Part shown: in pieces, positions 709 through 50,107 of the stretch | Layout of the letters: each line of letters opens with the position of its first letter | How positions within the stretch are numbered: position 1 is the first letter of the stretch | Source of the DNA: Takakia lepidozioides | Lineage: Eukaryota; Plantae; Bryophyta | Direction of reading: 5' to 3' | Length of the DNA: 64,000 nt | Assembly (NCBI GenBank): GCA_030704615.1 | Contig: CM060731.1 | Span: forward strand, 48,794,001 to 48,858,000 | Notes under the pieces: model-generated | Told to the model about the DNA's origin: nothing | The model's input: the letters and a program-made list of their open reading frames with translations, nothing else | Database searches by the model: none | Translations under genes and position numbers: made by a program

Positions 709-1743
709 AAAACATCCGCTTGAATATGTGTTTCGAAGTTCTGAAGCGGCTCACGCTATGCCTGACTTCAACCACAATACCCAAGTACGCAAGTACTCAC
801 ACAGCGGCTTCGTCAGTAGACATTGCTTCAGTACTTCGCATGATTCAAGTATCGGTCCTAACACGACGCTGTTCACCCTGTACTCTCCAAACAGCCTCAG
901 CAATGATATCTTGTCCTTCCTGGTTGACGGGTTCATATAGCGCACCTCAAGCTGACTTTTTCAACACGGAGAAACGAACTCTGAGACAGGCTGCAGCTTG
1001 TACTCCAAAAGCCCATCTCCCTGTCTTGCCGCAGGAGGTGGGATTGACTTCCAGGAGGAGCAAAGAAAGAAGGAACGGGTCAAAACGTGACGCCATAGCT
1101 GCTCCATAGTCAATAGCTTCAGGGCCATAGCGGCCAAGTGGGCACTTTAAAACCTCCCCTTTTTCTTTAGTCAGTAGGTACGATTCCAGGATTGGACTGC
1201 TCATATCTCATCATCCAAAACGAGACAATTATAGGAGACTACGAGAGCACAAGCACTCATCAGTGTCTCCATCCCATCCTCGCAACGAGCACGCTCTATA
1301 AAAATCCTTGGGACTTCCCAGTGAGATCATGATATCCTCGCCGCTCTGGCACGGCACTCGAATGGCACTTGGAGCTGTTCACCAAAGCAGCGCTTCCGAG
1401 ACTTTTTGTGTATCTACTCTTAGCCGATTCCCAGGAGGGTTACCATGTATGACAATGGGATTCATTTAGTTTATGAGTGGAAAATGCACACATCCCTGTG
1501 AAGTGGACGTTCATGTGGGCCACCACAGCACTCAACCACCGTTGTTCTCAACATGATTCTCATGGTCGAAGTGCAACAATAGTCGGGTTGATTTCCTTTG
1601 TGAAGAAGGATTGTTTGCTCGTTCGAACAATCATGCAGTCTTTTGAAATTACTCATGTGGGTGAATTTCGTTTGAGATGACCATCATTCATAACCAACCT
1701 TTTGACCTTTTCATCTGTTTGCCTTTTAGTAGCAATCTGGGTG

Positions 1744-2041
1744 GGCGCACATTAGAAAAGCCCTGGGAGTTTAATGCGACCCCTTCCGTCCTGCGTGCGT
1801 GGCACCCCCCCCCCACCCCAGCCGCACCCCTTCGCCGGCTCCTGCGCGGCTCGCGGTCGCTGCGCCCCGGCGCCCTCTCGCCAGCCCACCCCTCACGCCC
1901 CCATCCCCCTGCCCCCCGCCATCCCCCTCCCCGCCCGCCCGCCCTCCCCGCCCCCCGCCCGCCGGCCGTCACCACACCACATGAACTTTGTGGCACATGA
2001 CACCTATCACCACAACCCAACATCGCGCGCAGGACACATCG
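1744..2041 (+). repeat. Left terminal inverted repeat of the MULE (C-rich)
   Basis: Inverted match to 21013-21282, from GGCGCACATTAG to ...GGACACATCG. Confidence 0.93.
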
Positions 2042-2419
2042 TGAGTCGAAAACATGGATCCATACATGGCAGATGACACATACATGATGGTCACGAAAGT
2101 AACATGATGACCATCACGAAAGTCACATTATGACCATAGGCGTGAAGCCCTCACATATGCATGCATAAACAAGGTTGTACATGTTCAAATTTCAAAATTC
2201 AAATTTGAAATTTAGTATTATTTTATGGATTGGGTCTACTTCTAGGATTTAGGATGGATGTATGTAGGTACGGATGGATGAGACCAAGAAGTATGTGTAA
2301 TGAGAGGCAACCTCCAATCGTCACCTTCCTTTCATGGTCCTCTCAAACTGTTCTGACCACGAAAGCACAACGTGCAGCCAGTACCAGCCGTGCCTCAGGT
2401 CCCTGAATTGCGCCACGAT

Positions 2420-3613
2420 ATGTCTGTTGCCGAGAATGAAGATAATATTGCAACCCATCTTGTTTTGCTGCTTCGAAACCAAGTTCAAATGCCCAATGTA
2501 GGTGCTTTTAACCAGCATGTACTGCAGTGGCGTTTCCAATGGCATGGCAAGCCTCCTGGCCAAAACTCTGTTGAAGTCGCCTACATTCCCTAGAATCGAG
2601 TTGCTGATTTCATTACAGGGGAGTCTTCCCGTTCAGATGGCCCATGCACTTTCAGCAGGCATCAGCAAAGATGCCATCCGGAGGGGTCTCTCTCAGCTCC
2701 TCGCAGCAACAGTGCCAGGACTACAACAAGGTACATTGGGCTACAGGTCATGTGTTGCAAGGGCTACTGAATGATTTCCATGAATGTCCGAGTGCCTGAA
2801 TCCCCTTGGTGTCATAGTAACGGATTGTTTTTTTGTTATTGTAGGTATCACTGCTCATATGGTCCACAGGACAGAACTAGTTCCCTCTTGGAGGTTACCC
2901 CTGCAATGGCACACAAGAAACGCCGAGTGAAGCCTGCAAAGAAGAAGGGGAGGAAGCCAAGAGCCACGGCCGCTTCCACTGAAGCAAAGCCAAAACAAAT
3001 GAGGACCACACAAACAAAATCGGGGGAAGGCATCAAGAGGGGATGCATGTGCAGGTTTGTAGTGAAGCAATGCTATGTGGACCCTGATATTGTAGAGCTG
3101 GTCTATTATGAAAAGAGACATGTGAATGGGGCTGGACAGGTCTTCCATGGACCTGCGCATCAAGTAGGTCGCGTTTCATTAGCTCCCCACCTGAGAGATG
3201 AGATGAAATCATGGGTGTTACACAACCTCCGTCTCGGACTAAGCATCAACAAGATAATGGCCAAGCACACGCAGAAGGTGAGGGAAATCATGGATGGGGG
3301 GTTCGAGGTTACTCGTGACACCTTCCTTCTTTCAAATGACATCCGAAATATTGCCAACAAGTGCGATGAAGAAACATTCAAAAAGCACTCCAATGATGCA
3401 CAAAGTGTCCGAATGTGGGTGCATGAAAACCCAGGAAGCATTTTCTACTACCAGGAAGAGTCTAATCACCCTGCTTGGACGTTGAATGACAGAAAACTCG
3501 ACCTTCCATTTGTGCTTGGCATACAAACTGATTGGCAGAGAAAACAGATGCTCAAACACGGCCATCGTCGCATAGTTGCTTGTGATGCAACCTTTGGAAC
3601 GAATGAAAAGAAG
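2420..3613 (+). pseudogene. MULE/SWIM-family transposase, N-terminal half (premature stop, truncated)
   Basis: Exon 2420-2730 has an in-frame TAG at 2591-2593, followed by a GT-AG intron at 2731-2844 and exon 2845-3613. Motifs VAYIP..VADFITGES, CSYGPQD, KRGCMCRFVVK, PFVLGIQTDWQ and ACDATFGTN (first catalytic D) match the At4g13970/At1g60560-like MULE family as I recall it. The remaining DDE and SWIM exons were not found. Confidence 0.85.
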
Positions 3614-5249
3614 GTTCGTCAGATTGTTAACCCAAATTTCTTGAAAGCATGACAAATTACGTTCTTCGTGTGAAGTACTCTGTTTTGCAACCATTTCCTT
3701 TGCATTTGAAGAAGGTCTCCTGATTCAAAATACCTACTGAACTACAGTGACCCAAACCAAAGATCCAAACTCCTAGCAAGTTGAACTACATCCCAACTCA
3801 CATGTAAGAGTTTGATGAGGCTACAAACCGAAAGAGAATGAGCCCTGTATCTGATGCTATTGTTATGATGGTCTCCAATACTAGAAAGTCGCCTCTTCAA
3901 GGCAACAATACGCAGAGCTCGGTTTAAAACCCGCTGAGGCGGTTCAGAGTGTGTCCTGAACCCTAAACCTCAATGAAAAGCAACATACCTCGTTGGCAGG
4001 CTGAAAAGATGCATTGGTCTTCCTCACCGTCTCCTGCAGATCACATGTATTAGCCACAATATTTAAGATCCAAAGAACTTCACCACCCCCTCATAGTTCA
4101 CCATCCCATTTCCATGCACACACAAATTTGAAAAGACATGTTCAGTCGGAAGGTCTGCTTCAGATTATCCCTACATAGACCAGCCTCATTTCCCATTAAC
4201 TCAGCATACACCCCATGGAAATGACAGACCTGAAGTTCAGAACCAGGAGAAAGACATGGCTACTCGGGAAATTACCCACCCGTGCCCCAAGATTCCAGGA
4301 CCAGGAAGAGGTTGTACACCGGCTGAAGGACTTCAGGTAAGCCAACATAGGGAGGTCTCATGGATCACCAACAGTGCAGCTGCAAAACAGCCTAACACCG
4401 TTGTACTCAGGTCAAAGATTCCTATGTGCTCCTAACGAAGGTTGGGGGCCACATGCTTTGGGCCTGGACCCTTCGAAGGAGAACGAGTGTTTTCATATTT
4501 TTACCTTGTTTCAATGGGTAGATGAAGGTTGGGACTGCATTAAACTGCTGGACGAACTTCCTTCCCCCATCATTCGCAAGCTTCAGAAGGGTTGCAGACC
4601 TGAAAGACCTTGGACCAGGGCTGGTGACATTTGTCTAACTATTGAGGATGGAGTGATGCATGTCATGTTTGCTTCCTTCATGCATTTGCGGAAGAACTCA
4701 TCCTCGCTGTTTTTGCGTGTCTTGCCGCATTGGGGGAGCAATCACTTCCACCACTCAGTCTTCTTCTTTCGGTGGGATATGAGAGTGTGTGTTTGGAAAG
4801 AGAGAATGATTAGGCAAGAGGTTCAGGTGCCTAATTATGAGTGGAATTTCAAAGATGTTGACTAGTTAATAGCATCTTGAACCTCTTTCACTAGCATCAC
4901 ATAGTTTGCCTCTTTTCTACGTTTGTGTGACCCTTCAGGGTGGAATTCTGGAAGCATGTGATGTTTGCTTGAACAATGTAGATGCCAAAAAACAGATTGT
5001 CACAACAATCTTTCCATGTATTCATGTCCAAAGTGTACTCCCGGCATTCATGGTTTTCATTTTGCTTTCACATGGTTTGAAGGTTCTCCCACCTTACTTG
5101 CACATGCACGGGTTCATGCACTTGCATATGTTCTAAAGTAGGTGCAGCAAGTGGAGTTGAAAGTGAATGACACATGCTGGGAGTTGTTGGAATCACTCAG
5201 TGTTGGGGTTTTGTCATCAGTGAGCAACCCTATTCAGGACCATACTCCT

Positions 5250-5930
5250 GACACCTCTGTTCACCAACATTGAAAATCAGGAGGCTTAGCCTAAAGCCCT
5301 GCTCCCCTTGGGGTATACAACAGATGGATGCTTGTGCGGAGGGATTTCTGCAGGAAATCTGGAAAGCTTGAACAATTTCCTGAACCAATTTTATATACCA
5401 ACGTAAGTCTCAGTACTGGATTAACCCCTCACAAATGTAGGTGTATCGCCTCTTCTGTTGCCCAACCATGGATGCGGGGTCTATGGCCACGACGCTATGG
5501 CAAACAACGTCTCGTGAGTACTCAGGACCAGCAAGAACATAGTCTCTCCCTACGCCTCTGTTCACCAACTTTCAACCACTTTCACAAACTTTGTCGAGGC
5601 TGAGCCTAAAGCCCTGGCCATGTTGGGGTCTGATTGCTGGGCAAGTCATACTCAGCAGATTCATGCATGTGTGAAGGACTTTCTAGAGGAATGAAGGAAA
5701 GCCTGAACAATGTCGAACATAGTCTCTCCCTACAGCTCTGTCACCAACTTTCAAGAGGTTTAAGAAACTGCGATCCTTCCTGAGTCTAAAACCCTGGCCA
5801 TGTGGGGGTATGATTGTTGGGCATGTCACCCTCAGCAGGTTGATGCATGTGTGAAGGACTTTGTAGAGGAACGAAGCGAAGGTTCAACAATCTCCTGAAC
5901 CAATTTTGTATACCAACATAAGTCCCACTT
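5250..5930 (+). repeat. Internal degenerate repeat array of the MULE (continues at 13240-13530)
   Basis: Recurring modules ..CCCTGGCCATGT(T/G)GGGGT.., ..TGCATGTGTGAAGGACTTT.TAGAGGAA.. and TCCTGAACCAATTTT(A/G)TATACCAAC(G/A)TAAGTC (~5378, ~5893, ~13317). Confidence 0.8.
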
Positions 5931-7109
5931 CTTGTGCCCTTCGAATGGATGCGAGAATGGATGGAGCAGCCCAAATTTCCAAGAGGGGGGGTGACAAATG
6001 ATGTGGTGTCTGTGTGGGTGTGAAGCAGTGGGAGCTGTGGGGCCAGCGATACAGCATTGGGAGGGGATCATGGGCTTGCCCCAGGCAAGAAGGCCATGCA
6101 ACCAATTTAGCTACCACATGACCACTGGTTGAAACAGGTAGTTAGTAGAGAGAGAGAGTGAGAAGGAGAGTACAGATACATAAGCTAGAGGTGTTGTGGA
6201 ACGTGGGTGGGTGGTTGAATGTGTGGGCAGCAACGTCCAACACTACAACAGATGAGTGTTTTTATGACTGCACATATGACTATTTTTTCAGTCCTATATG
6301 CGTTCATGACTACATCACTCTGTAGTGAAAAAAGCCCTATCATAGCGACTAGTCTTTAGCACTGCATTTTGCAAGTCATAGCCGTGACTGCATGCGTGGC
6401 ACTTGGAGTCATGCATAAGAGAGTGATGTATTTACAACTCTATGACTTACATACGACTAACTATATGACTACATTGTCTGATGAGCGTTGCCTACATGGA
6501 GAGGCTTTAGAGGAACACGTGCACCACTGCGCAAGCAACACGTCACGACACCTGTTGCACTTCAGATGTGACATGTGGCACTTAGACATAATATATGACT
6601 AGCATATATGGCAGGGTTTATGCCACATGTCATCAAGAATGTCTCTGAAAATAATTTAATAGTTATATTTGTAATTTTAAATTCTTAAATTTTTATTTTA
6701 TTTTTGAAAACAAGGGATAGCAGCTTGGAAATTTTTATTAAATGGTATTATTGTTTAATTTAATAATGTTATATAAAATAAAAATAGATTAAATGATTTA
6801 AATTCTTCATTACATGGTGAAATTCTGATATAAAAAAAGAATGGACCCCTCTTGCATACTAGCAACCACAAGGACATTCAAAATAGACGAGTTCACGGGA
6901 ATACACGCCGTATAAATTATATTACAAAAATCCAAATGAGACCAATGTCCCAATGGACACCTCAAAGGCCACAATGTCCAAAAATCCACGCCTGAAAAGG
7001 TCCAGTAAGCAAAAAATAAGCAAGCCCACACATGGGCTGAATTGTTGTAATATTAGTTTGTTCTGGTGCTACTAGAATCAAGGACCCTGTTAAACAGTGC
7101 AATACTTAC

Positions 7110-10100
7110 GGCCGATTTGATAAGAGGGAAAAACAGGGTGAAATGTGTTGAAGAAGGTGCCTTGATTAACAGTGCCTGATTTGATCAATTGTGTCGCTGC
7201 TGCTGCGGCTTCCAGTTGACCATCTACCCATGCAAGTTTCTTGTACCTATCCTTCCACAGGGAATCATAGGTAATATGGAGCTTGAAATCCGGCCCTCTT
7301 GGATGAATCTGGACCCACACATCTATCCCTGATCCTTCAGCTATCCATTCCCTTGCACAAATCATGCATACATCCTCGCCTTGCTGCTAGCAGCTGACAA
7401 TGACAACCTAGAATTGCTTGAGCAAACACCCCAACCCTACTTATCACACTAGTTCCTATGCTGACTTGCGTCTGCTTCCAACAGGCATTCACCTTTTGCC
7501 TCGATTGTTCCATCATTGACTGAGGTCGGGAACGTATTCATCCTAGAGCTTCTCCTCGAGTCTCTGTTATCTATTTTTCGATACTTTCCTGTCGACCACA
7601 TTGGCAGTAACATGTCAAAATCACTCCAAAACTATCATAGATCCACCAACGAGCTAACTTGCAGAATTCAACATTAAAATTTAGGGACGACTCTGATAGC
7701 AGGGGAAAACAAGGTGAAATATGTTGAAGAAGGTACCTTCATTAGCAGCGCCTTGTTTTATGAATTGTGCTGTTGCCGCTGTTGTTTCTAGTTGACCATC
7801 TACCCACTTATAGCCGCTGTGAGCTATTGAAGAAGGTGCCCCCTTCCCCCATCATTTGATCATATGTCTCCATACCATGTCCCTGCTCTGCATATCCTAC
7901 AAGCATCGCGTTCCATGACACCACATCTCGTTCAGCCATAGTGTTGAAAACTCCCTTCGCATCCTTAATGCACCCACATTTCGCATACATGTCCACCAGG
8001 GTAGTGTTCAGAATGACATCTGGTACAATTCCAGCTTTGATGGTGTCACCATGGACCTCTTTCCCCTTTTCCAGAGGTCCCAGGCTTGCACACGCATTGC
8101 AAACACAAACAAACGTGATGTGGTTGGGCTTCACCCCTTCGCGCAGCATTTGCTCATAGGTCTCCAAAGCATTCGTACCACACCCATGCTTGGTAAATCC
8201 TGCCAACATTATATTCCACGTTATCAAAGATCATTTAGACATTCTGTTGAAAACTTCGTGAGCATGCATGCATGATGCTCCTGCACTTAACATACATGTT
8301 TGCTTCTGCACCCACATTTTGCATAGATGTCCACCAGGGTATTGTTCAAAATGGCATTTGGTACAATTCCAGCCCTGATGATGTCGCCATGGACCTCTTT
8401 GCAAGCCCTTTTCCAGAGCGACCATGGCTGTGTTCAGAATGACATTTGGCACAATTCCAGCTTTGATGATGTCACCATTCACCTCTTTGCCCTTTTCCAG
8501 GGCTGCCAAGCTTGCACAAGCATTGCGAGTGCACACAAACGTGATGTGGTCGGCCTTCACCCCTTCGCACATCATTTGCTCATACGTCTCCAAAGCCTCC
8601 ATCTCGCGCCCCTGTTGTGCATTCACTGCGAGCATCGCACTCCACGACACCACATTTCATTCAGCCATATTGTTGATCACTCCCTTTGCATCCTTGATGC
8701 TCCCACATTTGGCATATAAGTCCACCAGGGCAGTGTTCAGGATCACATTTGGTATGATTCCAGCTCTGACGATGTCGCCATGCACCTCTTTGCCCTTTTC
8801 CAGGGCTACTAGGCTTGCACACGCACTGCAAACGCACACAAACGTGATGTGGTCGAGCTTCATCCCTTCACACATCATTTGCTCATACGTCTCCAAAGCC
8901 TCCATCCCGCGCCCCTGCTGTATATACCCTGCGAGCATCGCACTCCACGACACCACATTTCGTTCAGCCATATTGTTGAACACTCCCTTTGCATCCTCGA
9001 TGCTCCCACATTTGGCATACATGTCCACCAGGGCAGTGTTCAGGATCACATCTGGTACGATTCCAGCTCTGACAATGTCACCATGCACCTCTTTGCCCTT
9101 TTCCAGAGTTGCCAGGCTTGCACACGCACTGCAAACGCACACAAACGTGATGTGGTCGGGCTTCATCCCTTCACACATCATTTGCTCATACGTCTCCAAA
9201 GCCTCCATCCCGCGCCCCTGCTGTATACCCTGCGAGCATCACATTCCACGACACCACATTTTGTTCAGCCATATTGTTGAACACTCCCTTTGCATCCTCG
9301 ATGCTCCCACATTTGGCATACATGTCCACCAGGGCAGTGTTCAGGATCACATTTGGTACGATTCCAACACTGACGATGTCACCATGCACCTCTTTGCCCT
9401 TTTCCAGGGCTGCCAGGCTTGCACACGCACTGCAAACGCACACAAACGTGATGTGGTCGGGCTTCATCCCTTCCCCCATCATTTGCTCATAGGTCTCCAA
9501 AGCATTCCTACCACACCCATGCTTGGTAAATCCTCCCAACATTATATTCCACGTGTTCAAAGATCATTGAGGCATTTTGTTGAATACTTGGTGAGCATCC
9601 ATGATGCTCCCGCACTTAACATACATGTTGACAAGGGTGTTGAGGAGAAAAACATTTGGCGTGAATCCACTTTGGATAATGTGAGTTTGCACCTATTTTT
9701 CAGCTTCCAGGCCTTTCACCTTGATGCACTTATGCAAGAGACAGACATACGTTTCTGAATCTACTGAAATGCCTCCTTGGTTTAAAGTCTGTAGAGCCTC
9801 TGTCAGTCTGCCTGCCTCACAAAGCATCTTCACATGCCCATAAGTGCCAGAAGAGACATTGTGGACTCCCTCTCTTGATCCGCTTCCAGAAGCTGTGGTC
9901 ACGGTTGAGGTGCCTGGTTTTATCAACTGTGCCGCTGCAGCTGCTGCCTTCAGTTGACCATCTACCCATGCAGGTTTCTTGTGGCTATTGATCCACAGGG
10001 AATCATAGGTAATTTTGTGCTTGAAATCTGCCCCTCTTGGAAGAATCTGTACCCACTCTCTATCCCTGCTTCTTCAGCTATCCATGCGTCTGCACAAATC

Positions 10101-12055
10101 ATGCATTCATCCTTGCCTTGCTGCTAGCAGCTGACAATAACAGCCTAGACACCCAACTCAGCTTATGACCCTAGTTCCTATGTTGAATTGCATCGTTACT
10201 CTCTGTAATCTAACATACATTCACCTTTTTGCCTCGATTGTCTCACCATTAACTGGGGTCACAAAAGTATCCATTCCACAGCTTCTCCTCATCTCTGTTA
10301 CATACTTTCCTGTTGTCACATTGGCAGTATCATGTCAAACTTGCTGCAAACTAGATTCACTCAACCAGCTAACGTGCAGAATTCAACATGGAAATTTAGG
10401 GCCGATTCTGTGATTGGAAAGAGAACCCAGAGGGATGGAATGGAAGCAGCAACATAGGTGTGTCTCTGATGCATCAACAGACAGCGGTCAGACCAAGTTC
10501 TATGACCCAAACCCAGAGTGAGCACAATGGCTTTGTAAGGCCAATGCCTACAGGGCATATTCAATACTACAATGAGGATACGCAAGCAACAGATACCATG
10601 TGCAAATAAAAAAACAACAAAGGTGATGAAGGTGCGCAACCTGCCAAAGAGAGGGCGGAGTTGAGGAAGGATGAAGCAACTACAGACATTGGGAAATGCT
10701 CTGATGCGGGCAGAAGGGAAGACCCAGGCCCTGTCGGGGTTCAGCTGGCAGAAGAACAAGCTGCTGACAGCAACAACATGGAAGCAGAGTGGATACAAGT
10801 TGATTTTGACAAACCTAAGTCCATCAGACAAGGCATCAGAAGGCCCAAACAAAGAACACTGTGCAATATCTGTAATAACATGAGACACAGTCATCACGTC
10901 ACACGCTAACCCAACATGGGTCTTGGCAAACTTTCAGCAAAGCTGAATCAATCACAGAAGCAAAAAAAGGGGCAGGACCTCAAGGGAAGATGTATGGAGT
11001 ACCTTTTGCAGTGATCAATGAGTACGTGGAAGGAGGAGAAGCTTACCCATTGCCAAGCACGGAGTACATGATGCAACCAACAGCACAAGTATCATGTCAG
11101 TTCACTCATAATGAGCTGGAGGCACTGGATAAGTTGGACGAGATATACCATATAAGTGATCACACTCCAATAAGACTACAACAACACCCCACATCAACAT
11201 GTTGACACGGGGAAGTGCAAAGAAGGCCAAAATATGGGATGGGATGCCTATTCTGCAGAAATCCAGCCAAGACATCAAGGATTTAGGGAAAAAACATGGA
11301 TTTGGTGAAGAAGAATGCATTGGCATGGACAATATCTACAGCTCAGCAAGGTTTGAGCGCCAACCAGAGATATTCATGGGAGAGGGTGACAAAAGTGAGG
11401 AAGAAGCCAAAACACAAAGCCTTGACGCATTCACTGAAGACTGGGCAGACAAACAGATAAGAGAAGACAGCTCACAAGAAACGGATAAGAGGGAAAAACA
11501 GGGTGAAATGTGCTGAAGGAGGTGCCTTCAGTAGAAGTGCCTGACCTTATCAATTGTGCCGCTGCTGCTGCCGCTTCCAGTTGACCATCTACCCATGTAG
11601 GTTTCTTGTAGCTATCCTTCCACAGGGAATCATAGGTAATGTGGAGCTTGAAATCCAGCCCTCTTGGATGAATCTGGACCCACACTCTATCCCTGCTCCT
11701 TCAGCTATCCATGCCTCTGACAGCCTAGAATTCTACCAGCAAACACCCCAACCCTATTTATCACAATCTGAAATGCATCTGTTTCTCTCTGTAGTCCAAC
11801 AGGCATTCGCCTTTTTGTCTCCATTGTCCCACCATTGACTGGGGTCGGAAAGTGTTCACCCCAAAGCTTCTCCTCACCTCTATTATATGTTTTTGGATAC
11901 TTCCCTGCTGCCACACTGGCAGTAACTTGCCAAAGTCACTCCAAACCACCACAGATCTACCCAACGACCTAACTTACAGAATTCAATATGCATCTTGCGG
12001 CCGAGTTTGATGAGAGGGCAACACAGGCTGAAATAGGTTGAAGAAGAAGGTGCCC
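7110..12055. repeat. ~570-bp repeat unit flanking the PPR array: copies at ~7110-7685, 7686-7806 (partial), ~9910-10410 and ~11485-12055
   Basis: Shared blocks GAAGAAGGTGCC, GCTGCTGC..CAGTTGACCATCTACCCA, CCACAGGGAATCATAGGTAAT and CAGAATTCAA. Confidence 0.85.
7808..9926 (-). pseudogene. PLS-class pentatricopeptide repeat (PPR) gene, degenerate, no E/DYW domain
   Basis: Canonical P-L-S triplets (VVSWSAMLAGY / HITFVCVCSACASL / VILNTALVDMYAKCGSIEDAKGVF) in ~303-bp near-identical units. There is a 2-bp deletion near 9225, a CGA>TGA stop at 8657-8659 and a partial duplication at ~8310-8420. The 3' end is fused to the flanking repeat. Confidence 0.93.
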
Positions 12056-15000
12056 TACCACATTGTCCTTGACCTGTCCTGACCCATGGAGGATTTGACC
12101 GACCATCAACCTAAAAAGACCTCTTGTGTGTGTTGCTTGTGTCTGTAGTCAGGTAATGTCGGATTGGTCTGTGAGATCGAACCACCACGGCGTAGCTGAG
12201 TAGTCAGAGCTTGAAACACGCCTGCTAAGACCAAGCTGACTCTCCCAAGAACGGCGAGCTCGCTTCTCCTCATCTCCTCTCCTCCTCCTCTTCTCCTTTG
12301 TGCATCATTTGCTCAACGCCTCCATCCCACGCCCGTGCATATCCTGCTATCATCGCGTTCCATCCCTCAGCTATGTGGTGTGGCGCAGGAGACAAAAAAA
12401 CGCCAAGTCCCAGCCCTCCTTTCTGTTCACGATTACCCTAATGGGCAACCTTATTAGCAACTTTTTAACTTTTTTAAACCTAATGGGCAACCTTATTTGC
12501 ATTATATGTGCCTTCAAAATGACACGTGTAGTGATGTAGTCGTATAAATAGAGCTGTGAAACCATCTTTAGTCATGGAGTCATAAGATTCCATGAAACGT
12601 CGTCCACGTGTAGTCAAACATATCACACTAGTCATATAAACCATCCCTGTCATCATGGTCAACAATGTTTGACCAATGCTCCATAACTTTCCGGAGTCAT
12701 GTAGTGATATCCATTACTACAAAGTCATAAAACTATGACTGCAATGCATTTTAGTGCTCTGTAGTCATCTACCTAGTGCAGTTTTTATGACTCCGCCAAA
12801 GCCGTAGTCCTAAAAACGCTCATCTCTTGTAGTGCAAGGATGCTGTAAGCTGCAGGGAGAGGGGGCTGTAGTACCAGTAGTTAGTGGCGTAGAAGCTAGG
12901 GAACAGGGAGGGCAGACTGCAAATTGAAGATGAGCAAGAGGGTCCTCTATATGAGAGGGTAGTATGGGTTTATGGGTGTCAAAGAAGACCTTAATGTACT
13001 GGGTAACATAGCAGCTCTGAGGCATGCATGTAGTACAGACAGTAGGGTGTGTTAAGCTGGTGTAAGGCAAGAGATAGGGAGTGTGGAGGGGGGAAATTAC
13101 CATGAATTTGGTGTGTGTGTTGATGCAAGTGCTAGTGTAGGGCAGATCTGGTGGTGTTAACAGTGGTGGGACAACATACAGTCTCATATCATTTAGTGTA
13201 GTCTGGACGGTCCGTTGGAAGGGGGCTGGGCAAAATTTGGTCAGCTGCAGGTCACCCCCAGCAGGTTGATGCATGTATGAAGGACTTTCTAGAGGAATGA
13301 GAAAGCTGCAACAATCTCCTGAACCAATTTTGTATACCAACATAAGTCCTACAATTGGACTGAACCCCTCACTTAGATAGGTCTATCGCCTCTTCTTTTG
13401 CCCAAGAATGGATGCGGAAGGTCGAGCCTTAAGCCCTGGCCATGTTGGGGTCTGATTGCTGGGCGGGTCACACTCAGCAGATTCATGCATGTATGAAGGA
13501 CTTTCTAGAGGAATGAAGGAAAGCCTGAACCAAGAGTCTTCAACTCATACCAACTCTGAGATAAGTAATTGTTACAACATGCATGTACTATATGTCTGAA
13601 GCCAACTTTCATGTACAAACCCCGAAATAAGGAGGCACAAAGCGAGAGTCTGGTGCAATGAATTCTGCCAGTACTAGGTCTTCAATGAAAACATGAGAGT
13701 CTTACAACCATTCAGTCCTGCATAGCTGTGGACCTCATCCTCCAAAAACCCCTTAGAGGGGTCTACGACTATTATGCCCCTCTTACTTTCTGGGATGAGT
13801 TCCAGAAACTCTTGTACCCATCCCTCTCCCATATCTACATGGTACCCCCAATCCACAACACCATCCCCTTCATAGCGGCTGGTTGTGTGGTGTCAGGTCT
13901 TCAACACAAGCCTGTCCACGAAACCTAACAGCACATGGCACAAAACCACAGCTCATTGCTCCTCTTCATCCATTGTGTAGAAACACTTCAGGTCGCCCAT
14001 GTGGACTGTCATTGTCCTTACTCCTCCTTGGATTTTGTAAACCCACACTTTGTCTTGTCCCTCTTCCGTTTGCACCTTTTCAAGAAGGCGCAAGATGACC
14101 TCATGGGGAATATGGGCTGGCAATTCTTCAAATCTTGCATAAATCTTGCGGAGCCTGAAAGCTACACCCGCCCCAAATCCCATTGCAACCCTCAACTTGA
14201 TATAGTAGTCTCCTCGGAATATGTAAGTACTATAGTGTGTGGAGAAGATGACTCCAAAGAGCTATGACTTTCTTAGAAGAACACCAGGAAAACAACGTAT
14301 ACAGGAGACGATTTGGGTAACCCTAAGATAACAACAGAACTTCCTGATACTCCCTCTTGAAAGAGATGATGTGAAGAAAAACAACGATGAATCACATGAA
14401 ACACATAATGACCCTGTGCTTATATTCAATTTTTCAACTTGCTCTTCCACAAGGTCTTGATGGGACAAACGTGAACTCCCCACTAGCAGAAAAAGCACCT
14501 ATGTATATCCCATCGAGGGTTGCACTGTGTAACGGCTGCACCGTTACACATGGCATTTGCATCTGTTTGTCATCCATCCGTTCTGTGTAATCATCCCCCT
14601 GTCGGATTTATCAGCTTCACTTCTTCTCCTCTTATTCAATCGAGGTTAAGTAAAGTCTTTGTCGCTGGAGAATGAACCTAGCTTTGTAAACTGTTGTTAT
14701 GTACACATACACAATGAATACATCGTTCCTCTTGTGCTCAACATTCTAGAAGCGCTAATGTGAATGCTCGTCACAGTTCGAATAAAACAACCAACTTGAA
14801 GATGCACGTGGGTTTTTCAGACTCCAGCTTGTCCTGCTCTTGTGCAATTCATGTGTAACAATATGTCAGATTTGCAGCATGACGCTACCATTCCAACACA
14901 ATATCAGTAACCCATACGGAATGCAACATTGTACATGGCCCAATATGAATGCAAGTGGCAGTATGAACAGGAACCCTAAAAGACCAGATGCATTGAGGTT

Positions 15001-16220
15001 TTGTGAGCATAACCTGTTGTAGTGTTACTCAATTCACATCTGTAGTATCTTATTTTGCATGTGAGAGGGAGTGGCGAAGACTTCGACAATCTTAGTCTGC
15101 ATGGGGTTGGGTTGGCTTGTGTGTCACAGAATAGAATGTCCATGCCAGGTTACAATTTACATATTTTACCAGCAACAGAACCTGGTGCGAAATTGAAGCA
15201 TAACAAATCGCCATTGAGAACATAACTGTGAGAACCATGGTTCAGACCGTGGATATAATCGTGTGACACTGTGACCTCATGTCTGGAGGCATAAGTCTGG
15301 AGGCATAAGTCCTGAATTCTGTGAAAGAAAGACTCCAATGAAGGTAGATACGGGAACAACTGTTTTCTCGAATACCCCATTTGGATCGCCGATGTGCATC
15401 CCATAGAACGATGAAGTCTGTAACGTCTGCAAGATTACACAAGAAGTTTCATCCATTCTTCTGTCAGTTGTCTTTTCATCCGCCAACCATCATCTGACAC
15501 TATCATCCTCAACCCTCATGTTCTGCCGCTATTCATCCCATCGACGGATGAAATATGTGTGCATGCACGGTTACACATGATTGTCCATCCATTCTTTTCT
15601 CAGTTTCCTTTTCATCCGCAGATCATCAGCATCATCACAACAGGGACCGTAAGAAGATGAACTTGCAACTGAGCAGAGTACACAATGATCTGTGACGGTT
15701 TTGTGGACATACCAACGCCATTAGCCATAATACTGTCCAACTGAAACAGCCTCCACAGGTACAGTCAAGCACACCTTCCTCTTACGCGCCAAAACAACGT
15801 GAGGTTTGAGGAGGAGACTGTTTACACGAGTATTGTGGAGAAAATGTGTCATATGGAGCTTGGTTGCTTCGCCTTCATGAGGAGCGGCAATCGACGAGGT
15901 TGATCTTTGTTGCGAAATGGAATCCAGTTGCTGCCGCCGGTGAGGATCGGAATTGAGTGCATTTCATGAACTGAATGTCTATGATGTTTGAGAAAGTAAG
16001 GTTGCATTTTCCTCCTCTTCTTTTCGTAAGGCTGCATAGGTTATAGCCTTCGCGCCATCCGATAATATTCCGACTCTTGCACTCGGAACAGCTGCTTATG
16101 TGACCATCTGCCTGAAAGCCCCAAAAAACAGTGAAACATGGGAAGCGGCATATGTTTAGTTTCTTCAGTTCTCAAAATCAGTAATGTATATCTTCATTGT
16201 TTTTTAAGGAGGCAGTATAC

Positions 16221-17241
16221 AATGGAGGTGAACCTCACTCGTTCGAGACCAGGGCTGGTTAAGCGTCCTCATGAAGATTTTGCTTTCAGAATGTTGATGA
16301 ATGCTCAATCGGTCTGGGCCGAGGATGGCAGTGTAGCAGGGTTGGCGGTTTCGCAGCTCTAGTCATTGGTGACCTGGCAGACCGCATTTGAACTGGCATA
16401 TGTTCAATCGCAGCTTAAGTCGCAATTGGAAAAGCACACTCGCACTTAAGTTTGGGCAAAGGCAGACACATTTGAGGGCGTTTGTTTTTGGTACCGGGGT
16501 TTCCAACTTCCTTTGGGCTGCTTTTCCATTACGAACTCAGGTCATGGCATACTATTCAGGTACGAATGGCAGTCTTATTGAAGTTGCCATTGAAGATCCC
16601 CGCGATATCTCGGATGTGCTGCAACCGCGATTGGCAGGGACACGCACTGTCGTTGCAAACATTTTGTTTGGTTCCAGCATGGAGAAATCAGTGTGTCTGG
16701 AAGGAATAGTGTTGTTGTACAAGCCGAATGCCCCAAAGTCATATGCTATGCAATATGTGACTAGGGGGTTGCTTTGTGTATTTGGGATGTGATTGCATGT
16801 GCTGCATAGGCAAAAGGATTTCATGTGGACACAACCACGAAGGCTCGGATTTCTGGGGAGTACTTGTGGTTGGAGGTGAACCTGCGGAGTCCTCAGAAGA
16901 TCTTCAGCATTGTGGAGGCAGACGAGACCGGGTTCCTATCCAAGGTCCCCATTGTGGACCTGAAGAAGACCCTCGCTGGTATAAAAACTAACGTGATGGT
17001 GAAGGGTAGCTTTACAGTGCGACTAAAAAAGCAGTATAGGGTTGAGAGAGGAGAGCATAGTGTTAGTTGGTTGTTGGGGCTCACTCCCACTACTGCTTTT
17101 TTGATTGACAAAACCGACATCGATAAGACTTCTGCCATGGATGAGCTCGTGCAGGACTTGGGTGCTCTTAGAGTCAGTCCAGCCCTCTCAGGTTTGCTTG
17201 TAGGTGGGGCAGGATCGTCCACGCCAAAATCTGAGAAGTAA
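16221..17241 (+). CDS. Orphan multi-exon ORF inside the MULE (possibly degenerate)
   Basis: Three consecutive coding-like segments (MEVNLTRSRP.., VMAYYSGTNG.. after a CAG acceptor at ~16540, and ..DTTTKARISGEY..SEK* ending at 17241). An internal stop occurs at ~16360. No family recognised. Confidence 0.4.
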
Positions 17242-18330
17242 TTGATAATGCTTCATAGAAGACACGGTCGGCGGCTTAAGGTGGGGATCCAATTGAGTGC
17301 ATGTGTTTGCTCTTTCAAAAACTGAGGCTAGAGTTTGTGGGGCAGTTCATAAGTATTTCTGAACTAGAGGAATTGCTTGGTCGTTCAGTACTGCCTCGTT
17401 TGCACCAGAAGTGCATAAGGGGTTGCATGCAAATGTGCATGTTCCATGCTGAAGATCTGAACAAATGCTACTGAAGCAAGCATGGTGTGGTCTGATTGCA
17501 TGTGTTTGTCCCCCAGCTTCAAGAGGGCTGTGGGTGAAGTGAAATTCAATTATGAAGGGTACCTGACAGTTGGTAAAGGCACCCTTCAATCCATAGTCAT
17601 CCATATGTTCACACAGAACTTGCTGAGATTTAATTAAATGCATATGAAACCAATAGGCATTTATGCATAATATTGTTTGCTTTCGTAATCTTCCTTACCT
17701 GGGGTGATACCTTCAAGATTACATTCAATTGGCCTATAGCAATTAGCAGAAGGGAAGGGACATTTCTTATGTGTCACTTACCCTTCTACATACAGGTCAC
17801 ATGGGAAGTATGTAAATTTAGAAGGAATGATTTTGCAGCTCCCATGATGCTGGCAAGGCAGGCTTGCATTTGTGCACCCTGAAATCAGAACACATAAGTG
17901 GATGAAGTAGAAGAAGTGTATATTCCTTGGGAGATAGGGATGGATACAAATTGGGGCCGAAGTATGAAAGGACATTTGAACAGTTATTTTTTTTTTGGTT
18001 GACGGGCACCATTGTTGTAGAGAAGTGCACAGGCTTCGGTGAAGATGGGGGAGAGCAGGTATACGAGGAGGGGAAACATCAGCATATTCAATCCTTTCAT
18101 GTGTTAGAATGAAAGACAACGGCAAAGAGAGATGGGGGATGGAGAGGCCCATGTGTTCAAACATTGTGCCATAGACATGGAAATGTATGGACCACAACGT
18201 CCCGAATTTCGTATGTTGGTGCAATCACGGTTGGTGCGCATTATAGTCAACCATGATGCCGCTGTGGAGTTTATTTCCGAGCCTGATATCAGGTGCAAGA
18301 AATTTAATGAGAACAACACCAGGGACATTG

Positions 18331-20428
18331 TTAAGAACCACCAGGAACTGAAATGTAGTAGCACGAACCGTGGTAAGGGCAATACACACCTGGTGGACAA
18401 GGAAGCCAGCCCATGTTGACATCCTCCCGATGCTTCAAAATTTTGTTCAAGTCCTTCAAGACTTTTTTCTTGCCCCCTGCACCATCAGTTGGTATACTCC
18501 CACACCATAATATTTTGAAGGCAATAGGATTCAGAACGGCGAGGTCACGCACAGCCCTGCATCGGACCTCGCGCATGAAACAATGCAGATCTTCAAAAAG
18601 GTGTTCGCAGTCCTCTTTCCGCACTCCCCAAAGGGCTGCAAGCCCTTCACGCACCTGGGTTCGGGCTTCCTCGTATGAGGGCATGCCTTCGTACATGAAG
18701 TATCCAATCTGCAGGAAAGTCTCACCCGCATTTGTAATGGCACACTGGCCATCTTCTGTGTCGAGAAGATGATTTCGGAGAGTTAACAAGATGGAGTTTC
18801 GGGGAATTGACATAGGTTTCATGTTGTGAACGTGAGACATCCAAACCAGACGGAACACCCTGCTGAAAAGCGGAATGTTTGGAGGTGGAGCGTGGTGGCG
18901 AGCAGCCTCAAGAATGACCATCAACCTATCAGATTCATCCTCAGAATGTGTGAACATATCGGGGGGCAACTCAGGGATCTCACCTACTGCAACAATTTGG
19001 TACAGAGGGGACCAACCCCAGATTCCCTCCTGTTTCTCATCATATTGTTCTCTATCCCATTTTGCCATGTTGTCGTCAACAAACTGCCTTCTACGAGCCT
19101 CCAACTCAGACTGGGCTGCAATTCCTTTCATTTCGAAATCCAGCAATGCCATGGCATACTTGTGATGTGCCATCACCAGTTGGCATTCCGCCAACTGAGC
19201 GGGATGGTCACGAGTTACTCCAGGACGTATGGCAAATAGCTCCACCACATTTTCCACAGCTGCCTTCTCCTCTAGAGGTGCATCAAACTGCTCCCCCGCC
19301 ATTGCAGAGTCATGGAGCTGGTCAGTAATAGAGGAAGAGTAACCAAAAACCCTAAACTTGAAAGGCAACTTCAAACAAAATGCAAAGACACGCATCATCA
19401 AAGAAGGAGTTGTGACCATGAAGGTGCAGGCCAAGAAGAAGGTGTGTTACCCGTCGTTTAAGCCACCATTGACCGAAAGCGTTGCCCATCATTTGGTCCC
19501 CGAACTCAAATTTCCCAATAAGAGCCATAAGACGATTGAGAAAAGAAGGCTCGTCCAGAGATGGAAATCCGTCGGGCAACAAGTCGAACTTCATCAAATA
19601 GGTCAGTCCTGGGCATGAAACAGGTGCGGGTATGGGAGGCACAACAATATCTGAGGTCAGTAGCAACGACGCCTTGACAAAGCCTTCCCTTGCCTCTTCT
19701 CTACTTAGCGGTGCAAGGGTTGTGGACTTAAGAATGCGCACTGGAGGTCTGCCATCTTGTCTACATGAAGATGCAACTCCAACGTGCACTTTGGGTCGAA
19801 GACTTTGCTGCGGCACGGCAGGAGGTCGTACAAACGTAGAGTTTACAATGCGCTCAGATGGAAGACTTTCCTGTGATGGCAGAGGTGCGTCCAATGAGTC
19901 CTTTTGAATGCGCTGAGGTCTGACAGTCTGCTGTGGCAGCGCAGGTGGTGCGTCCAACAACTGGAAATTGTCATCGTCATCATCATCGTCAAGGTCCATT
20001 CCCGGCTCCTTCCGAAGAGTCATGTGCTTCCTGCGCTTAGGTTCTCGTGTAGTCTCTTCTGTCGTCGTCTCCTCGCGTTCTACCCTCGTCTTCATCAACT
20101 TGCAGGAAGGAGGCTTCATCCCATGCTTACTAAGAACAGCCTCCATGATGTGCCTCTGCCCCTTTTCAAAAACAGGGTACATTTTCAATTTAGGCCCACC
20201 CTTTCCCACAACAGCATCACAGCCATTTATCCTGTGAATGTTAAGTTTCTTCTTATCTTTATATTGCTTAAGACAATGGATACACTTGAACGGCTTCCTA
20301 TTATCATCACCGGGCTGCTCAACCCTTGCCTCTGAGTGAGCCTCGCATATGAGATTTTCCCACTCATCAGAGTCGTACGTTTCATTGTATGTCCGACGCG
20401 CTTCGCGCATGGAGGATTGTTTCATCAT
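18331..20428 (-). CDS. Two-exon ~650-aa unknown protein with N-terminal C2HC/C2H2-like zinc finger (MULE accessory gene candidate)
   Basis: Long ORFs 19352-20485 and 18331-19434 are joined in frame by a phase-0 GT..AG intron at 19450-19318 (CGG|GTAACAC ... TACTGACCAG|CTC). Features are FKCIHCLKQYKDKKKLNIHRINGC, a basic NLS-like PKRRKH, a poly-D tract, a Pro-rich linker and a helical C-terminal domain. Confidence 0.7.
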
Positions 20429-21012
20429 ATCGGCGCCCACTCCAAATCCACTACCCTCCTCCTGAAGAATCCTCCAGCCGAGCAAAGGTTGCTGGAATGT
20501 GAAAGCAAGAACTCAAACTAAAACATAAAGCATGCAAATGGACTGCAACAGACAGAAATGGCAAGCAAGAGGAAGAAAATAGCTGCAAATCACACGAATG
20601 ACTTCCAAATTCTCCAAAAAGAAACCCTATACTCAAGTCGAATGAGTAATCACTTTACCGCCACAACTAGTCAACAGTTTATAACAGCCGCGATGCATAC
20701 TCCTCAAGGAAGTGCTTGTAACACCGCTTCCGCCGGGATCATACATTTCGGGCCATGCAAACGCCAGGTAGCTTGGAAAACCTGTCCTGTGGCTGCCATG
20801 AATTAAATCAATCAAGCATCTACGTAGCTGAAGGGCCGCATTCGAATCGACAGGTCCACCTTCGAATCGACAGGTCCACCATGTTCGTGCGAACTGGACG
20901 CGAAAAGCACGAAAGGATGAGTATGTGTCACATCATGTCATGTCAAGCCGTCCATCATCATGGGTGATTGCAGCACATGGATCATGTTGCATCTCATCCA
21001 TCTTTCGTCATG

Positions 21013-21282
21013 CGATGTGTCCCGCACGTGATGTTGGGTTGTGGTGACAGGTGTCATGTGCCACAAAGTTCATGTGGTGTGGTGACGGACGGCGGGCGGG
21101 GAGGGCGGGCGGGCAGGGGGATGGGGGGGGGGTGAGGGGTGGGCTGGCGTGGGGGTGAGGGGGCGCCGGGCCGCAGCGACCGCGAGCCGCACAGGAGCCG
21201 GCGAAGGGGGTGCGGCTGGGGTGCCACGCACGCAGTACCGAAGGGGTCGCATTAAACTCCCAGGCCTTTTCTAATGTGCGCC
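21013..21282 (-). repeat. Right terminal inverted repeat of the MULE (G-rich on + strand)
   Basis: Reverse complement of 1744-2041, with indels in the homopolymeric G/C tracts. Confidence 0.93.
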
Positions 21283-22825
21283 ATCTGGGTGTGTAGATGC
21301 TCCAAGCCACGAGGAAAGTAGAATCTGTGTTTTATTTCCTGTGGGATGTGCCAGCCAGGTTGTTTGGATTTTGATTGAAATGGGTAATGGCAGGAAAGCA
21401 AGCCAACACTGTGTTTCACAAGAAGTTTGAAATAGATGGTGGAAAGATTCGGTGATGGGCAGTCCAGGGAGGAACAAAAAATGATAGCAGACATCAGTTG
21501 CACTGATCAGAAACTCAGAAGGCCTTGTTGCATCTATTTCAGCTGCAGTTGAGGTCGTGTCCCTCTCTTCAAACTGGGCTGCATCTATGGCCACAACGCT
21601 CTATTCTCTACGTCCATTATGGTGGTTCGACAACCTGAAGATCCATTTGTTTCGTGGGCACTCACTCAACTCTAGTGACAAAAGGAGAGAATCAAATAGC
21701 AAACAATTGTCAGTAACAGTATAAAGAGAGATGCTATGTTTGCTATGGTGTACCTGCACGGGCACTATTCCCAGGGCAATTCCCTAGTCTGCATTGGCAA
21801 GTTCTCACCCACAAGGGTGATTGGCTATAAAATCAGCCCAAACCTGTCCTCCTGCTCAGTCACAGCCAGCAAGATTATGATTCAAGGGCTCAAAATGAGA
21901 ATTTTTTGAAAAGCATTATGTTAAATGCAGCTAATGCAGCCCTACGATGAAAACAAGCGAGAATACAAGAGAAAAAATTATCGTCAATGTAGCTAGGGTT
22001 AGCTTGTCTCTGTAAGACTGTACCGCTGGCAAAATGTGGCTCTCTCTTCATCTTTCACTCCCTTAAAAGCATGCATTGACAGTTGAAGAAAAGTTAAAAC
22101 AAGTCAAGAGGACCATCTAAGGAATGAGATCCGTAATCAATTAAAAAATGTGTGTCTCGACCAAAAGCTGAAAATTTAAGTGCTGTGATTTGGGACACCT
22201 TCACAAGCAGGGTTGATTAAAAACGGAGCAATCTCGATACAGTAACCTAAGTCAGTCTACCAAAGCACTTGCCTTCATGGCGTGCTGAAAGGATAATGGG
22301 CAGACAACAGTGACAGAGACACACCACAGCACGGACGAGCATGGACTTACTATGAGACCTATAACCTTAAATTGAGCTCTCAATCGCCTATGAATTGTAA
22401 TTCAGCATGTGACACACAGTTTCGAGAAGAAACCCAACTCACACCCGACCGAACACAGCCTGCGTCACTTGGGGAGGGCGAGGCCACAACTTTTGCAATC
22501 CTCCAGAAAAACGTTAGCCCAAGTTCCAGATTCCATCTCCATCACCAAATTATGTCATGAGCAACACAATTTTGAAGACACTCTTCACTCCAGAGTTCGA
22601 TTTAGTAACCAAGTTGGCAGATTACCTTGTCCATCTTCTTCCTCCCTTTGCGAAAGAATGAATTCATTGGGAAACTTGCCCATTGCCCAGAGCCTGATCT
22701 CCAGAACAGGGATCAACCCTCATTCACTGGGGTCTTCCATAGATGAAACACTATATGGATAAATGTATACAACACTCACCGTAAGATTAAAATACGTAGG
22801 AATCTTCAACCGTTGGATCTATATT

Positions 22826-22878
22826 AACCCTAACCGGGGCTCCAACCCCAGATCCTCCTGGAGGTTAGGTTAGGGTTT
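22826..22878. promoter_or_regulatory. Telo-box elements in the RPL7a promoter
   Basis: AACCCTAA at 22826-22833 and TTAGGGTTT at 22870-22878, the latter also at 37110-37118 in copy 2. Telo-boxes are typical of plant ribosomal protein promoters. Confidence 0.65.
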
Positions 22879-22971
22879 GAGAGGCAGCTTGAGGCGAGGG
22901 GAGGACAAAGTAAGTCTCTTTGCGAAGCTTCGTCTTCCGTCCTCTCGCCGCCATCGCCAGACGTTGCTGCA

Positions 22972-25729
<2,758 letters not shown>

Positions 25730-26313
25730 GAGACTTGTCCCAGTAGTCTTGTTGTGCCAGACGTCTTCATGGAAGCAAATTGTTTTTAGGTATGATGAAG
25801 AGTATGCGGTCATACCAGATACGCCTACTTCCAAACAAAGATCGATGAAGAGTTCTATTTTGAGAGTCTTGCCTGTCAAAGCTATGATTCATTAGTGCGG
25901 CTTTTTATGTATAAATTTTCACATGCCTGACAAGATAGGAAGCTGATGCTGATTAAGAGTGTTACCACGAGTTATACCAGATAATCATGCAACCTATCTA
26001 CCAACCGTGGATGGTATGAGTGTCGAAGGACCAAAAACGAGTTGCCTGTGGGAAGTTCTATCAACCCTGATGACTTTTTCATCAACTTGGGAAGGGTGAA
26101 CAGAAGCTTGAGTGAATATAACAGCTTGGATTAATGAGTTTTATGTGCTCCATTGGGGTGTCTGGGAAGGATCAATGTACTGAAATTCCCTTATCGTTAC
26201 CTTCTCAGAGGGGATGTTTTCATCCTGACTAGAGGAGGAACCATAACTCGTAAGACACCTAGGGCCTTACAAAATTCGGAGTATGATGATTTGGGGGTGA
26301 TGGAGGGGACATG

Positions 26314-30292: not shown

Positions 30293-30394
30293 CATGGATG
30301 CTCCCACTGTACCAGCTGAGGAGCGCGAGCCATCATGTCGATGTTCCTCGCATGTAGGGGTTTGAAGTACTCAAAAAGGTACTCCCTTAGCAAC

Positions 30395-30860
30395 ATTAAG
30401 CTTGGATTACAACAACCTATTTTTCCCTGGAGATTCATCTTCTAATCTAATAGTACACAGTTCTTCATTGTATTGACCACTCAACAATGGAATGTAAGGT
30501 AAATCCGTTTTCTTTTTGTTAGATGTACTTGCTATTTCTTCAAATGAATCCAAAGTGTTCACGTCTTTTAATTAGTTTTAGATTTGACTCCTATCTATTA
30601 TTATATGCAACTAAACATTGATTTGTTGTTCTATGGAAGTTTAGATTTGGAAGAGCGCTATAGTATTGCCGCTCTCTCTCGTGTCTCATGTCTTTGAGTG
30701 TCTTATGTCACTCACTTGAGGCAACAACCATAACAGCTTGCTTGCCTTCAAGAATGTGAGAATTACATAGTTGTTCTCTGACAAAGACATGATTATTGAG
30801 AAAAATCGTAAGCATTTTACGTTTGAGAATGTAACATTGCATATTAAATGTTATCCCTTG
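30395..30860. repeat. Dispersed repeat, inverted homolog of ~52240-52610
   Basis: AAGCTTGGATTACAACAACCTA..GTTCTTCATTGTATTGACCACTC matches the reverse complement at 52480-52580. AACATTGCATATTAAATGTTATCCCTT is shared in direct orientation. Confidence 0.7.
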
Positions 30861-35945: not shown

Positions 35946-35947
35946 AG

Positions 35948-49138: not shown

Positions 49139-50107
49139 GGAATAAGCAGCAAAACATTCACGTGACAAAATATATTGTTATGTGAAATCTATTTTATGCA
49201 AGAAAGAAAATCATGAGTTCACATAAAATAAAATTTGCAAATACAATTCTATTTGTGATGGTTTCTTCACTGGTAATACTGACTATAAAAAAATCAACCA
49301 AAAACACATGTAGTCCAATTGATTAAGAAAATGTTCCTCAAGTGTTCCACACTTATGAATTAAATAACTGATATAATGAACTCTCAACGTGTATCATGGT
49401 TTTGAGTCTTTCTTATATCTTTTGGAATGAAGACATGTGTTCATGGCATTAAGGTGATTGTGACAACCAACATGGTTTTATAATGCAGTTGTTTTGGATG
49501 TGAATGGTCAAACTACAAATATTCACATCATATTGTTCACCACAAAAATAATTTGTAGTATATGTAACCACTTCATCAATGTTGTTTGAAATTTTTGAAT
49601 TGAACCACGTAAGCAATAACTTCAACTTGTGTGATACATGTCATGTAACCCGCAAATAATAATGGTCATACATTTATGTGTAGACGGGAGGTTTGACAAG
49701 ATACAAAACATAAATATAACATTGAAATTTTTAATTGAGCACTCGTAAATTATATATAGCTTGGAGGCATTGGCAAGTGCAAACTCTGAATTTGTCAAGA
49801 TGTTTGACATTTGTTAATGTATAGATGGACATGCGGATACTCGGAGATGCAAGTTAACGTGCAAACAAACGATCGATCGCTACTAAAATAGTGAGAAGTG
49901 TGAGGAATATCAACTTCTTAAACATTCTATATTTTATAACGAATTGCCTAGACTTGTAACTATTGAATATTGTGTAGATAAAAAGTTGCACATCAACATC
50001 AATAGCATGCACAATGGAACATTGGATGAGGAAGAAAAGGGGAAAGATATGAAGAACAAAAAGACACAAATGAGGATTAGGTTTATATTATCGATTGATA
50101 TTTTCAC

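What the first reader, a model, noticed from the sequence alone, without database searches (positions are those of the whole stretch)
1735..21291. 19.5-kb cargo-carrying Mutator element with its empty target site in the same window
Seen: ~300-bp TIRs, a perfect 9-bp TSD, and a paralogous duplicate (35951-36000) that reads straight across the site with a single ATCTGGGTG. The unit therefore inserted after the RPL7a duplication. Even without the nested CACTA it is ~13 kb and multi-gene: transposase at the left TIR, a convergent zinc-finger gene at the right TIR, and orphan ORFs and repeats between. Known: MuDR (mudrA/mudrB) and VANDAL (VANA/B/C) have multi-gene layouts. Inference: this is an undescribed large MULE family with its own accessory gene set and is the best candidate for a new system here.
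Basis: partly seen in the sequence, partly recalled or inferred. Interest (0 to 1): 0.88.

Follow-up and report, generated by a model that had tools for sequence, protein, structure and literature searches.

The report
Dead moss Mutator with helper gene
This is a real but crippled copy of a multi-copy moss jumping gene that has lost half of its transposase yet keeps an intact, undescribed zinc-finger helper gene; the same helper rides in other moss transposons, but here it lacks the protease and the repeated DNA word that go with it there.

Summary
Structure confirmed: inverted ends 1744-2059/20996-21282, 9-bp target duplication, an empty paralogous site at 35978, and a nested 6.6-kb CACTA with PPR fragments. 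The copy is non-autonomous: its transposase has a stop in exon 1 and nothing after the first catalytic Asp. The two right-hand ORFs are one intact two-exon 644-aa gene (C2HC finger, coiled coil, helical domain with no PDB match); an RNA-labelled contig of a related copy shows the intron spliced. Sequencing contigs show near-identical and ~84% copies sharing this gene and a broken orphan gene at 16.2-17.2 kb, so the cargo is not a one-off. The helper also lies beside related transposases in 7 of 27 Sphagnum-type loci, two of them inside inverted ends, and has transposase-free homologs in Ceratodon and Sphagnum. Several related elements are saturated with one short motif and some carry Ulp1; this copy has neither. 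Other 'orphan ORFs' are unsupported. The scan already found this helper family on other DNA of this genome. Verdict: a new variant of the known multi-gene MULE kind, not a new system; helper function untested.

The parts
1735..1743 (.). Left 9-bp target-site duplication
1744..2059 (+). Left terminal inverted repeat, GC-rich, starts GGCGCAC
2462..2745 (+). Transposase upstream exon (approximate ends), in-frame TAG at 2591-2593
   Evidence: tblastn to the matching exon of L004, E 8e-4; stop position
2843..3613 (+). Transposase exon 2, open, ends just after the first catalytic Asp motif (CDATFGTN); later DDE and SWIM exons absent from the window
   Evidence: 35-50% identity to P0001-P0013; no hit for downstream-exon profiles
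5318..5928 (+). About 180-bp repeat units, left of the CACTA
6238..12835 (.). Nested CACTA element 6241-12832 with CAA duplication; carries a 303-bp PPR repeat array (about 7808-9760, minus strand, broken) and repeated flanks; no transposase seen
13247..13530 (+). Further copies of the 180-bp unit, right of the CACTA
15388..15628 (+). Diverged 137-bp-period duplication; other copies also have 15629-15818 in the opposite orientation
16219..17241 (+). Orphan gene, broken here (stops 16360 and 16447, frame change near 16526), GT-AG intron 16757-16809, last exon 143 codons; 5' end unresolved
   Evidence: exon-side conservation in an 83% relative; no homolog
18331..19287 (-). Helper gene exon 2 (318 aa): coiled coil plus all-helical domain
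19288..19450 (-). Helper gene intron, 163 nt, GT-AG
   Evidence: spliced joint in X6 contig; junction aligns with Ceratodon P0016
19451..20428 (-). Helper gene exon 1 (326 aa): C-x2-C-x12-H-x4-C zinc finger domain, basic/acidic linker, short conserved block
20996..21282 (-). Right terminal inverted repeat
21283..21291 (.). Right 9-bp target-site duplication
35978..35986 (.). Empty target site in the paralogous segment

Best explanation
A deletion-crippled copy of a multi-copy bryophyte Mutator-like family (host probably Takakia, inferred). Shown: it was inserted by cut-and-paste with a 9-bp duplication, cannot make a working transposase, and holds a nested CACTA. Shown: it carries an intact 644-aa helper gene that is family-wide, spliced in at least one related copy, and an old passenger of this transposase clade. 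Inferred: any further movement needs a transposase from another copy acting on the inverted ends. Inferred, untested: the helper is a nuclear nucleic-acid or chromatin-binding accessory factor that promotes the element's own expression or transposition. I put about 0.45 on an anti-silencing role with a target I could not see, and 0.3 on a MURB-like transposase cofactor.
For: Ends, duplication and empty site. Missing downstream transposase exons by HMMER --max, while relatives have them with MULE/SWIM-like hits. Contigs at 98-99% covering 15.5-21.3 kb where the window has A/T against their G/C in 26 of the 40 listed differences versus 3 the other way, plus 83-84% relatives that keep exons but not introns, plus other flanks at the right end. 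Helper domains beside the transposase in 7 of 27 distinct loci with enough flank, 2 more with Ulp1 only, 0 decoy hits; two inside inverted ends with 9-bp duplications; three supported transposase subclades. Invariant C, C, H, C ligands in 20 sequences.
Against: No binding, methylation or mobilisation data. No motif enrichment in this copy's non-coding DNA, which a VANC-like reader would need. The one spliced contig carries a stop at the junction and its run is only guessed to be RNA. The closest helper homologs sit in host context. Contig depth gives no copy number. An autonomous copy with these ends was not seen.
Confidence: 0.72

Rival explanations
1. The helper is a conserved moss host gene that this family captured (transduplicated) and keeps, as KAONASHI MULEs keep Ulp1; its function need not concern silencing.
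For: Nearest homologs are Ceratodon M758_5G026400/KC19_5G024800 and P0015 (51% in the finger, 30% in exon 2, junction in register). They and intact Sphagnum genes have no transposase within the fetched flanks and keep position between Sphagnum samples. No motif coating here.
Against: The gene family rides in several unrelated-looking MULE subclades in two orientations. 30-50% identity to the host gene means any capture is ancient. The tree does not place the window gene, so domestication from MULEs fits equally well.
Confidence: 0.3
2. A VANDAL/VANC-like system proper: the finger reads a short word accumulated in the element's non-coding DNA and protects it from methylation.
For: Relatives L022, L059, L026, L084, L004, L005 are strongly motif-coated (log10 p -10 to -33 against null minima of -4 to -5). 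Earlier scan notes report the same in this genome. The 180-bp repeats could hold a site.
Against: In this element no 6-8-mer, exact or with one wildcard, beats a Markov null (p about 0.07-0.27); TGTAACCC is absent. CpG is depleted in the interior (o/e 0.34-0.45, similar to neighbouring host DNA) and the copy shows C/G-to-T/A decay. No VANC-like Pfam match.
Confidence: 0.2
3. A one-off Pack-MULE-like chimera whose internal DNA was captured at this locus only.
For: About 6 kb of the interior (3.6-6.2 and 12.8-15.5 kb) matches nothing fetched and was not covered by the read test.
Against: Two independent DNA runs hold other alleles of 15.5-21.3 kb, diverged relatives and different flanks; the helper-transposase link recurs in Sphagnum-type loci.
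Confidence: 0.05
4. The paralogous site is empty because the element excised precisely after being duplicated, not because it inserted later.
For: Only ~30 bp of left-flank homology, and a ~70-bp indel 12 bp from the site.
Against: The copy is only about 1-2% from its family and has a perfect duplication, whereas the paralogs differ by 5-8%; a single clean target copy is the expected pre-insertion state.
Confidence: 0.07

Closest known systems
Maize MuDR (mudrA/mudrB)
   Same: Long inverted ends, 9-bp duplication, transposase from one end and a convergent second gene from the other (layout from my own knowledge; MURA-MURB interaction in PMC12973397).
   Different: The second gene has a C2HC finger and a distinct helical domain with bryophyte-only homologs; no MURB match was returned by Pfam; a third orphan gene is present; the transposase falls below the Pfam MULE cut-off.
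Arabidopsis VANDAL (VANA/VANB/VANC) and KAONASHI
   Same: Multi-gene MULE; relatives combine a putative DNA-binding helper, Ulp1 and dense short motifs, as VANC systems do (PMC5735166, PMC13317346).
   Different: VANDAL/KAONASHI are non-TIR (PMC13317346); this element has 300-bp inverted ends, no motif accumulation, no Ulp1 and no detected homology to VANC.
Motif-coated zinc-finger/Ulp1 MULEs of this genome (scan notes s1-459431, s1-459310, s1-451701) and Sphagnum-type loci L022, L059
   Same: Finger and helical domain beside a related transposase inside inverted ends (tested for L022, L059).
   Different: No protease, no motif coating, helper nearest to the Ceratodon host-context gene, extra orphan gene.
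Pack-MULE / Pack-CACTA
   Same: Non-autonomous element with foreign-looking internal DNA; the nested CACTA with PPR fragments fits Pack-CACTA.
   Different: The outer element keeps transposase remnants and a whole intact family-wide gene rather than random fragments.

Membership tests
Mutator-like elements (MULE) | 8-11-bp (usually 9-bp) target-site duplication | tested here: met
   empty site
Mutator-like elements (MULE) | Long terminal inverted repeats | tested here: met
Mutator-like elements (MULE) | MULE-type DDE transposase with SWIM finger | tested here: inconclusive
   Window piece has no Pfam hit but aligns with relatives whose later exons hit MULE E 0.003, ZSWIM RNaseH-like E 6e-5, SWIM E 0.001, all under curated cut-offs
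Autonomous MULE | Complete, intact transposase | tested here: not met
   stop at 2591; downstream exons absent
VANDAL/VANC system | Short motif accumulated in non-coding DNA | tested here: not met
   with positive controls
VANDAL/VANC system | Non-TIR ends | tested here: not met
   300-bp inverted repeats
VANDAL/VANC system | Homology of the accessory protein to VANC | tested here: inconclusive
   No Pfam family or angiosperm-named hit; no direct comparison with a VANC sequence was available
VANDAL/VANC system | Sequence-specific binding and demethylation | not testable with these tools
   needs ChIP/DAP-seq and bisulfite data
MuDR-type (mudrA/mudrB) | Convergent second gene from the opposite end | tested here: met
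MuDR-type (mudrA/mudrB) | Second gene homologous to MURB or binding the transposase | not tested
   no MURB sequence in session; no interaction prediction run
KAONASHI-type (Ulp1-carrying MULE) | Ulp1/C48 domain | tested here: not met
   no ULP profile hit in the window; present in relatives and P0069
Curated Repbase/RepetDB family | Match of ends and genes to a deposited family | not testable with these tools
   no such library offered; paper searches found no description

The most novel reading that the evidence does not exclude
This family is a motif-free, protease-free branch of an old bryophyte MULE helper system with its own two-gene accessory set (finger plus a helical domain of unmatched fold, and an orphan gene). 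It works by a mechanism other than VANC-style motif reading, and the same helper was domesticated into fixed moss genes.
Probability: 0.2. Interest if true: 0.72.

Novelty: new variant of a known kind. Interest (0 to 1): 0.45.

Why it matters
Accessory genes of plant Mutator elements are poorly understood outside MuDR and VANDAL. This helper family is undescribed in the papers I could search, spans distant mosses, has a confidently modelled domain with no solved match, and has host-context homologs. This element is a natural control: an intact helper without the motif coating and without the protease lets one test which component reads the motif in the coated relatives. As a single locus it is a dead copy and repeats a helper family the scan has already reported.

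Tried and rejected
Pfam, PHROGs and NCBIfam gave no family for the transposase piece, either helper exon (only a sub-threshold C2H2 hit, E 0.076) or the orphan gene. Orphan gene: no homolog by word search, ESM Atlas (best 0.86, below use), PDB sequences, or HMM on the 92 loci then held. ORFs 4374-4865, 12810-13343, 13935-14267, 17778-18224 and 18108-18416 have no credible hit and are treated as chance frames. The first helper model only matched generic coiled coils. Viral contigs: nothing. Rfam: nothing in 1-26000. Motif coating rejected; a CATGCA excess (3.4 vs 0.9 per kb) does not rank among top words under the Markov model. Copy number from contig depth was rejected as unreliable: no single-copy baseline. 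The zinc-finger tree left the window gene unplaced, so no direction of capture is claimed. A resemblance of the transposase to Arabidopsis At4g13970/At1g60560 is from memory only; the paper search was blank.

Full report
Observation. Self-comparison gives inverted repeats at 1744-2059 and 20996-21282 (82% with gaps, E 5e-87), with ATCTGGGTG directly outside both. A paralogous segment reads across one copy at 35978-35986. Its left-flank match is only about 30 bp because a truncated Copia-like piece abuts it, but the match is significant (E 9e-8), and a contig from another sample carries the same empty junction. A CACTA element with a CAA duplication occupies 6241-12832 and carries broken PPR repeats. 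The element is 19,539 bp, or 12,944 bp without it.

Host. Not given. About 5,080 windows of 64 kb, 2023 DNA runs and moss homologs suggest Takakia; this is my inference, and note s1-459431 names the same host.

Transposase. Exon 2843-3613 is 35-50% identical to thirteen unnamed proteins, with a fourteenth at 27%, and ends just after the first catalytic Asp motif. An upstream exon has a stop at 2591. Relatives continue with exons that hit MULE, ZSWIM RNaseH-like and SWIM models below curated cut-offs. Profiles of those exons find nothing in the window. This copy is therefore non-autonomous.

Helper gene. The two long minus-strand ORFs are exons 20428-19451 and 19287-18331 of one intact 644-codon gene. 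Both halves match single proteins P0015, P0016, P0018 and P0020. A contig from a run guessed to be RNA joins the two exons across a 163-nt GT-AG intron, although that related copy has a stop at the junction; another such contig is 87% identical to the 5' end. The N-terminal domain has invariant C-x2-C-x12-H-x4-C ligands. Exon 2 is a long helix followed by an all-helical domain, modelled at pLDDT 82, pTM 0.78, with best PDB Z 3.7 and Atlas TM under 0.4; that is no match, not proof of a new fold.

Family status. Contigs of two independent DNA runs cover 15.5-21.3 kb with alleles 1-2% from the window. In the 40 listed differences the window has A/T against G/C 26 times and the reverse 3 times, as expected if the contigs follow a majority of copies and this copy has decayed. 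They also show a 4-bp insertion after 16305, a 1-bp loss at 16526, an inversion of 15629-15818, extra DNA at 18296, 83-84% relatives that keep exons but not introns of both internal genes, and other flanks at the right end. Copy number cannot be read from depth. The left interior was not tested. The orphan gene at 16219-17241 is broken here and has no homolog anywhere searched; its support is the in-phase intron and the exon-side conservation.

Beyond this genome. A metagenome scan with the transposase alignment gave 80 loci, 46 distinct; a contig from one of these samples is 96% identical to a Sphagnum chromosome. Of 27 loci with at least 3.7 kb downstream, 7 carry the finger or helical domain and 2 more carry Ulp1 only; 7 of these 9 are convergent and 2 lie upstream in tandem; reversed decoys gave none. 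L022 and L059 enclose helper and transposase within inverted ends and 9-bp duplications (one with a mismatch). They fall in three supported transposase subclades. The contig of P0004 also shows long convergent genes, identity unknown. Intact homologs with no transposase in the fetched flanks occur in Ceratodon (M758_5G026400/KC19_5G024800, between ordinary genes) and Sphagnum, one of them a finger-Ulp1-helical fusion. The Ceratodon gene is the window gene's nearest match, but the tree is unresolved.

Motif test. VANC systems depend on dense short motifs in non-coding DNA (PMC5735166). My test detects such coating in L022, L059, L026, L084, L004 and L005 at log10 p -10 to -33, against null minima of -4 to -5; the window element shows none (p 0.07-0.27), and no Ulp1.

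Mechanism. Shown: cut-and-paste insertion, loss of autonomy, retention of an intact family-wide helper. Inferred: insertion after the RPL7a duplication (1-2% against 5-8% divergence) and mobilisation in trans. Inferred and untested: the helper is an accessory nucleic-acid or chromatin factor, more likely acting on silencing (0.45) than as a MURB-like transposase partner (0.3; MURA-MURB binding in PMC12973397), the rest being a kept host capture with another role, as for KAONASHI Ulp1 (PMC13317346).

Verdict. It is a MULE by ends and duplication, works like MuDR in layout, and is not a VANDAL member. I found no paper describing this helper, and Repbase could not be searched. The scan has already reported this helper family in other elements of this genome. 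What this locus adds is a motif-free, protease-free version with an extra orphan gene. New variant of a known kind; interest 0.45. Spliced models were searched exon by exon and the joined search was left out.

Noticed in passing
window 6241-12832: Pack-CACTA-like element with a 303-bp PPR repeat array and three to four diverged copies of a ~600-bp unit (7119, 9857, 11484).
   Followed up: partly
L007:10001-12838; L093/L096; L008-L010; L097: Intact finger-plus-helical-domain genes in Ceratodon and Sphagnum with no transposase nearby, including a finger-Ulp1-helical fusion next to a shorter paralog: candidate domesticated helpers or donors.
   Followed up: partly
L022:2345-12201 and L059:932-18506: Sphagnum-type MULEs with inverted ends, helper upstream in tandem with the transposase, coated with ATGTTTC; L026 (TGTAACA), L084 (TGATACA), L004 (GTGACAC) and L005 have their own words.
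   Followed up: partly
window 21292-26060 and 35987-40400: Duplicated segment containing RPL7a-like genes, 5-8% diverged; the second copy begins at a truncated Copia-like RT (35094-35947).
   Followed up: partly
window 50251-50970 and 60775-61480: Two LTR-like copies in inverted orientation (85%), with Gypsy-like gag and RT frames at 58639-60776.
   Followed up: no
window 30394-30773 / 52214-52582 and 49732-50106 / 51298-51658: Two further inverted-repeat pairs of about 380 bp (78% and 85%); not examined for target duplications.
   Followed up: no
   Followed up: no
L001:10001-11038: A distant relative of this transposase exon (P0014) lies on metagenome contigs of unknown organism and carries the MULE-like segment in the same exon.
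   Followed up: partly
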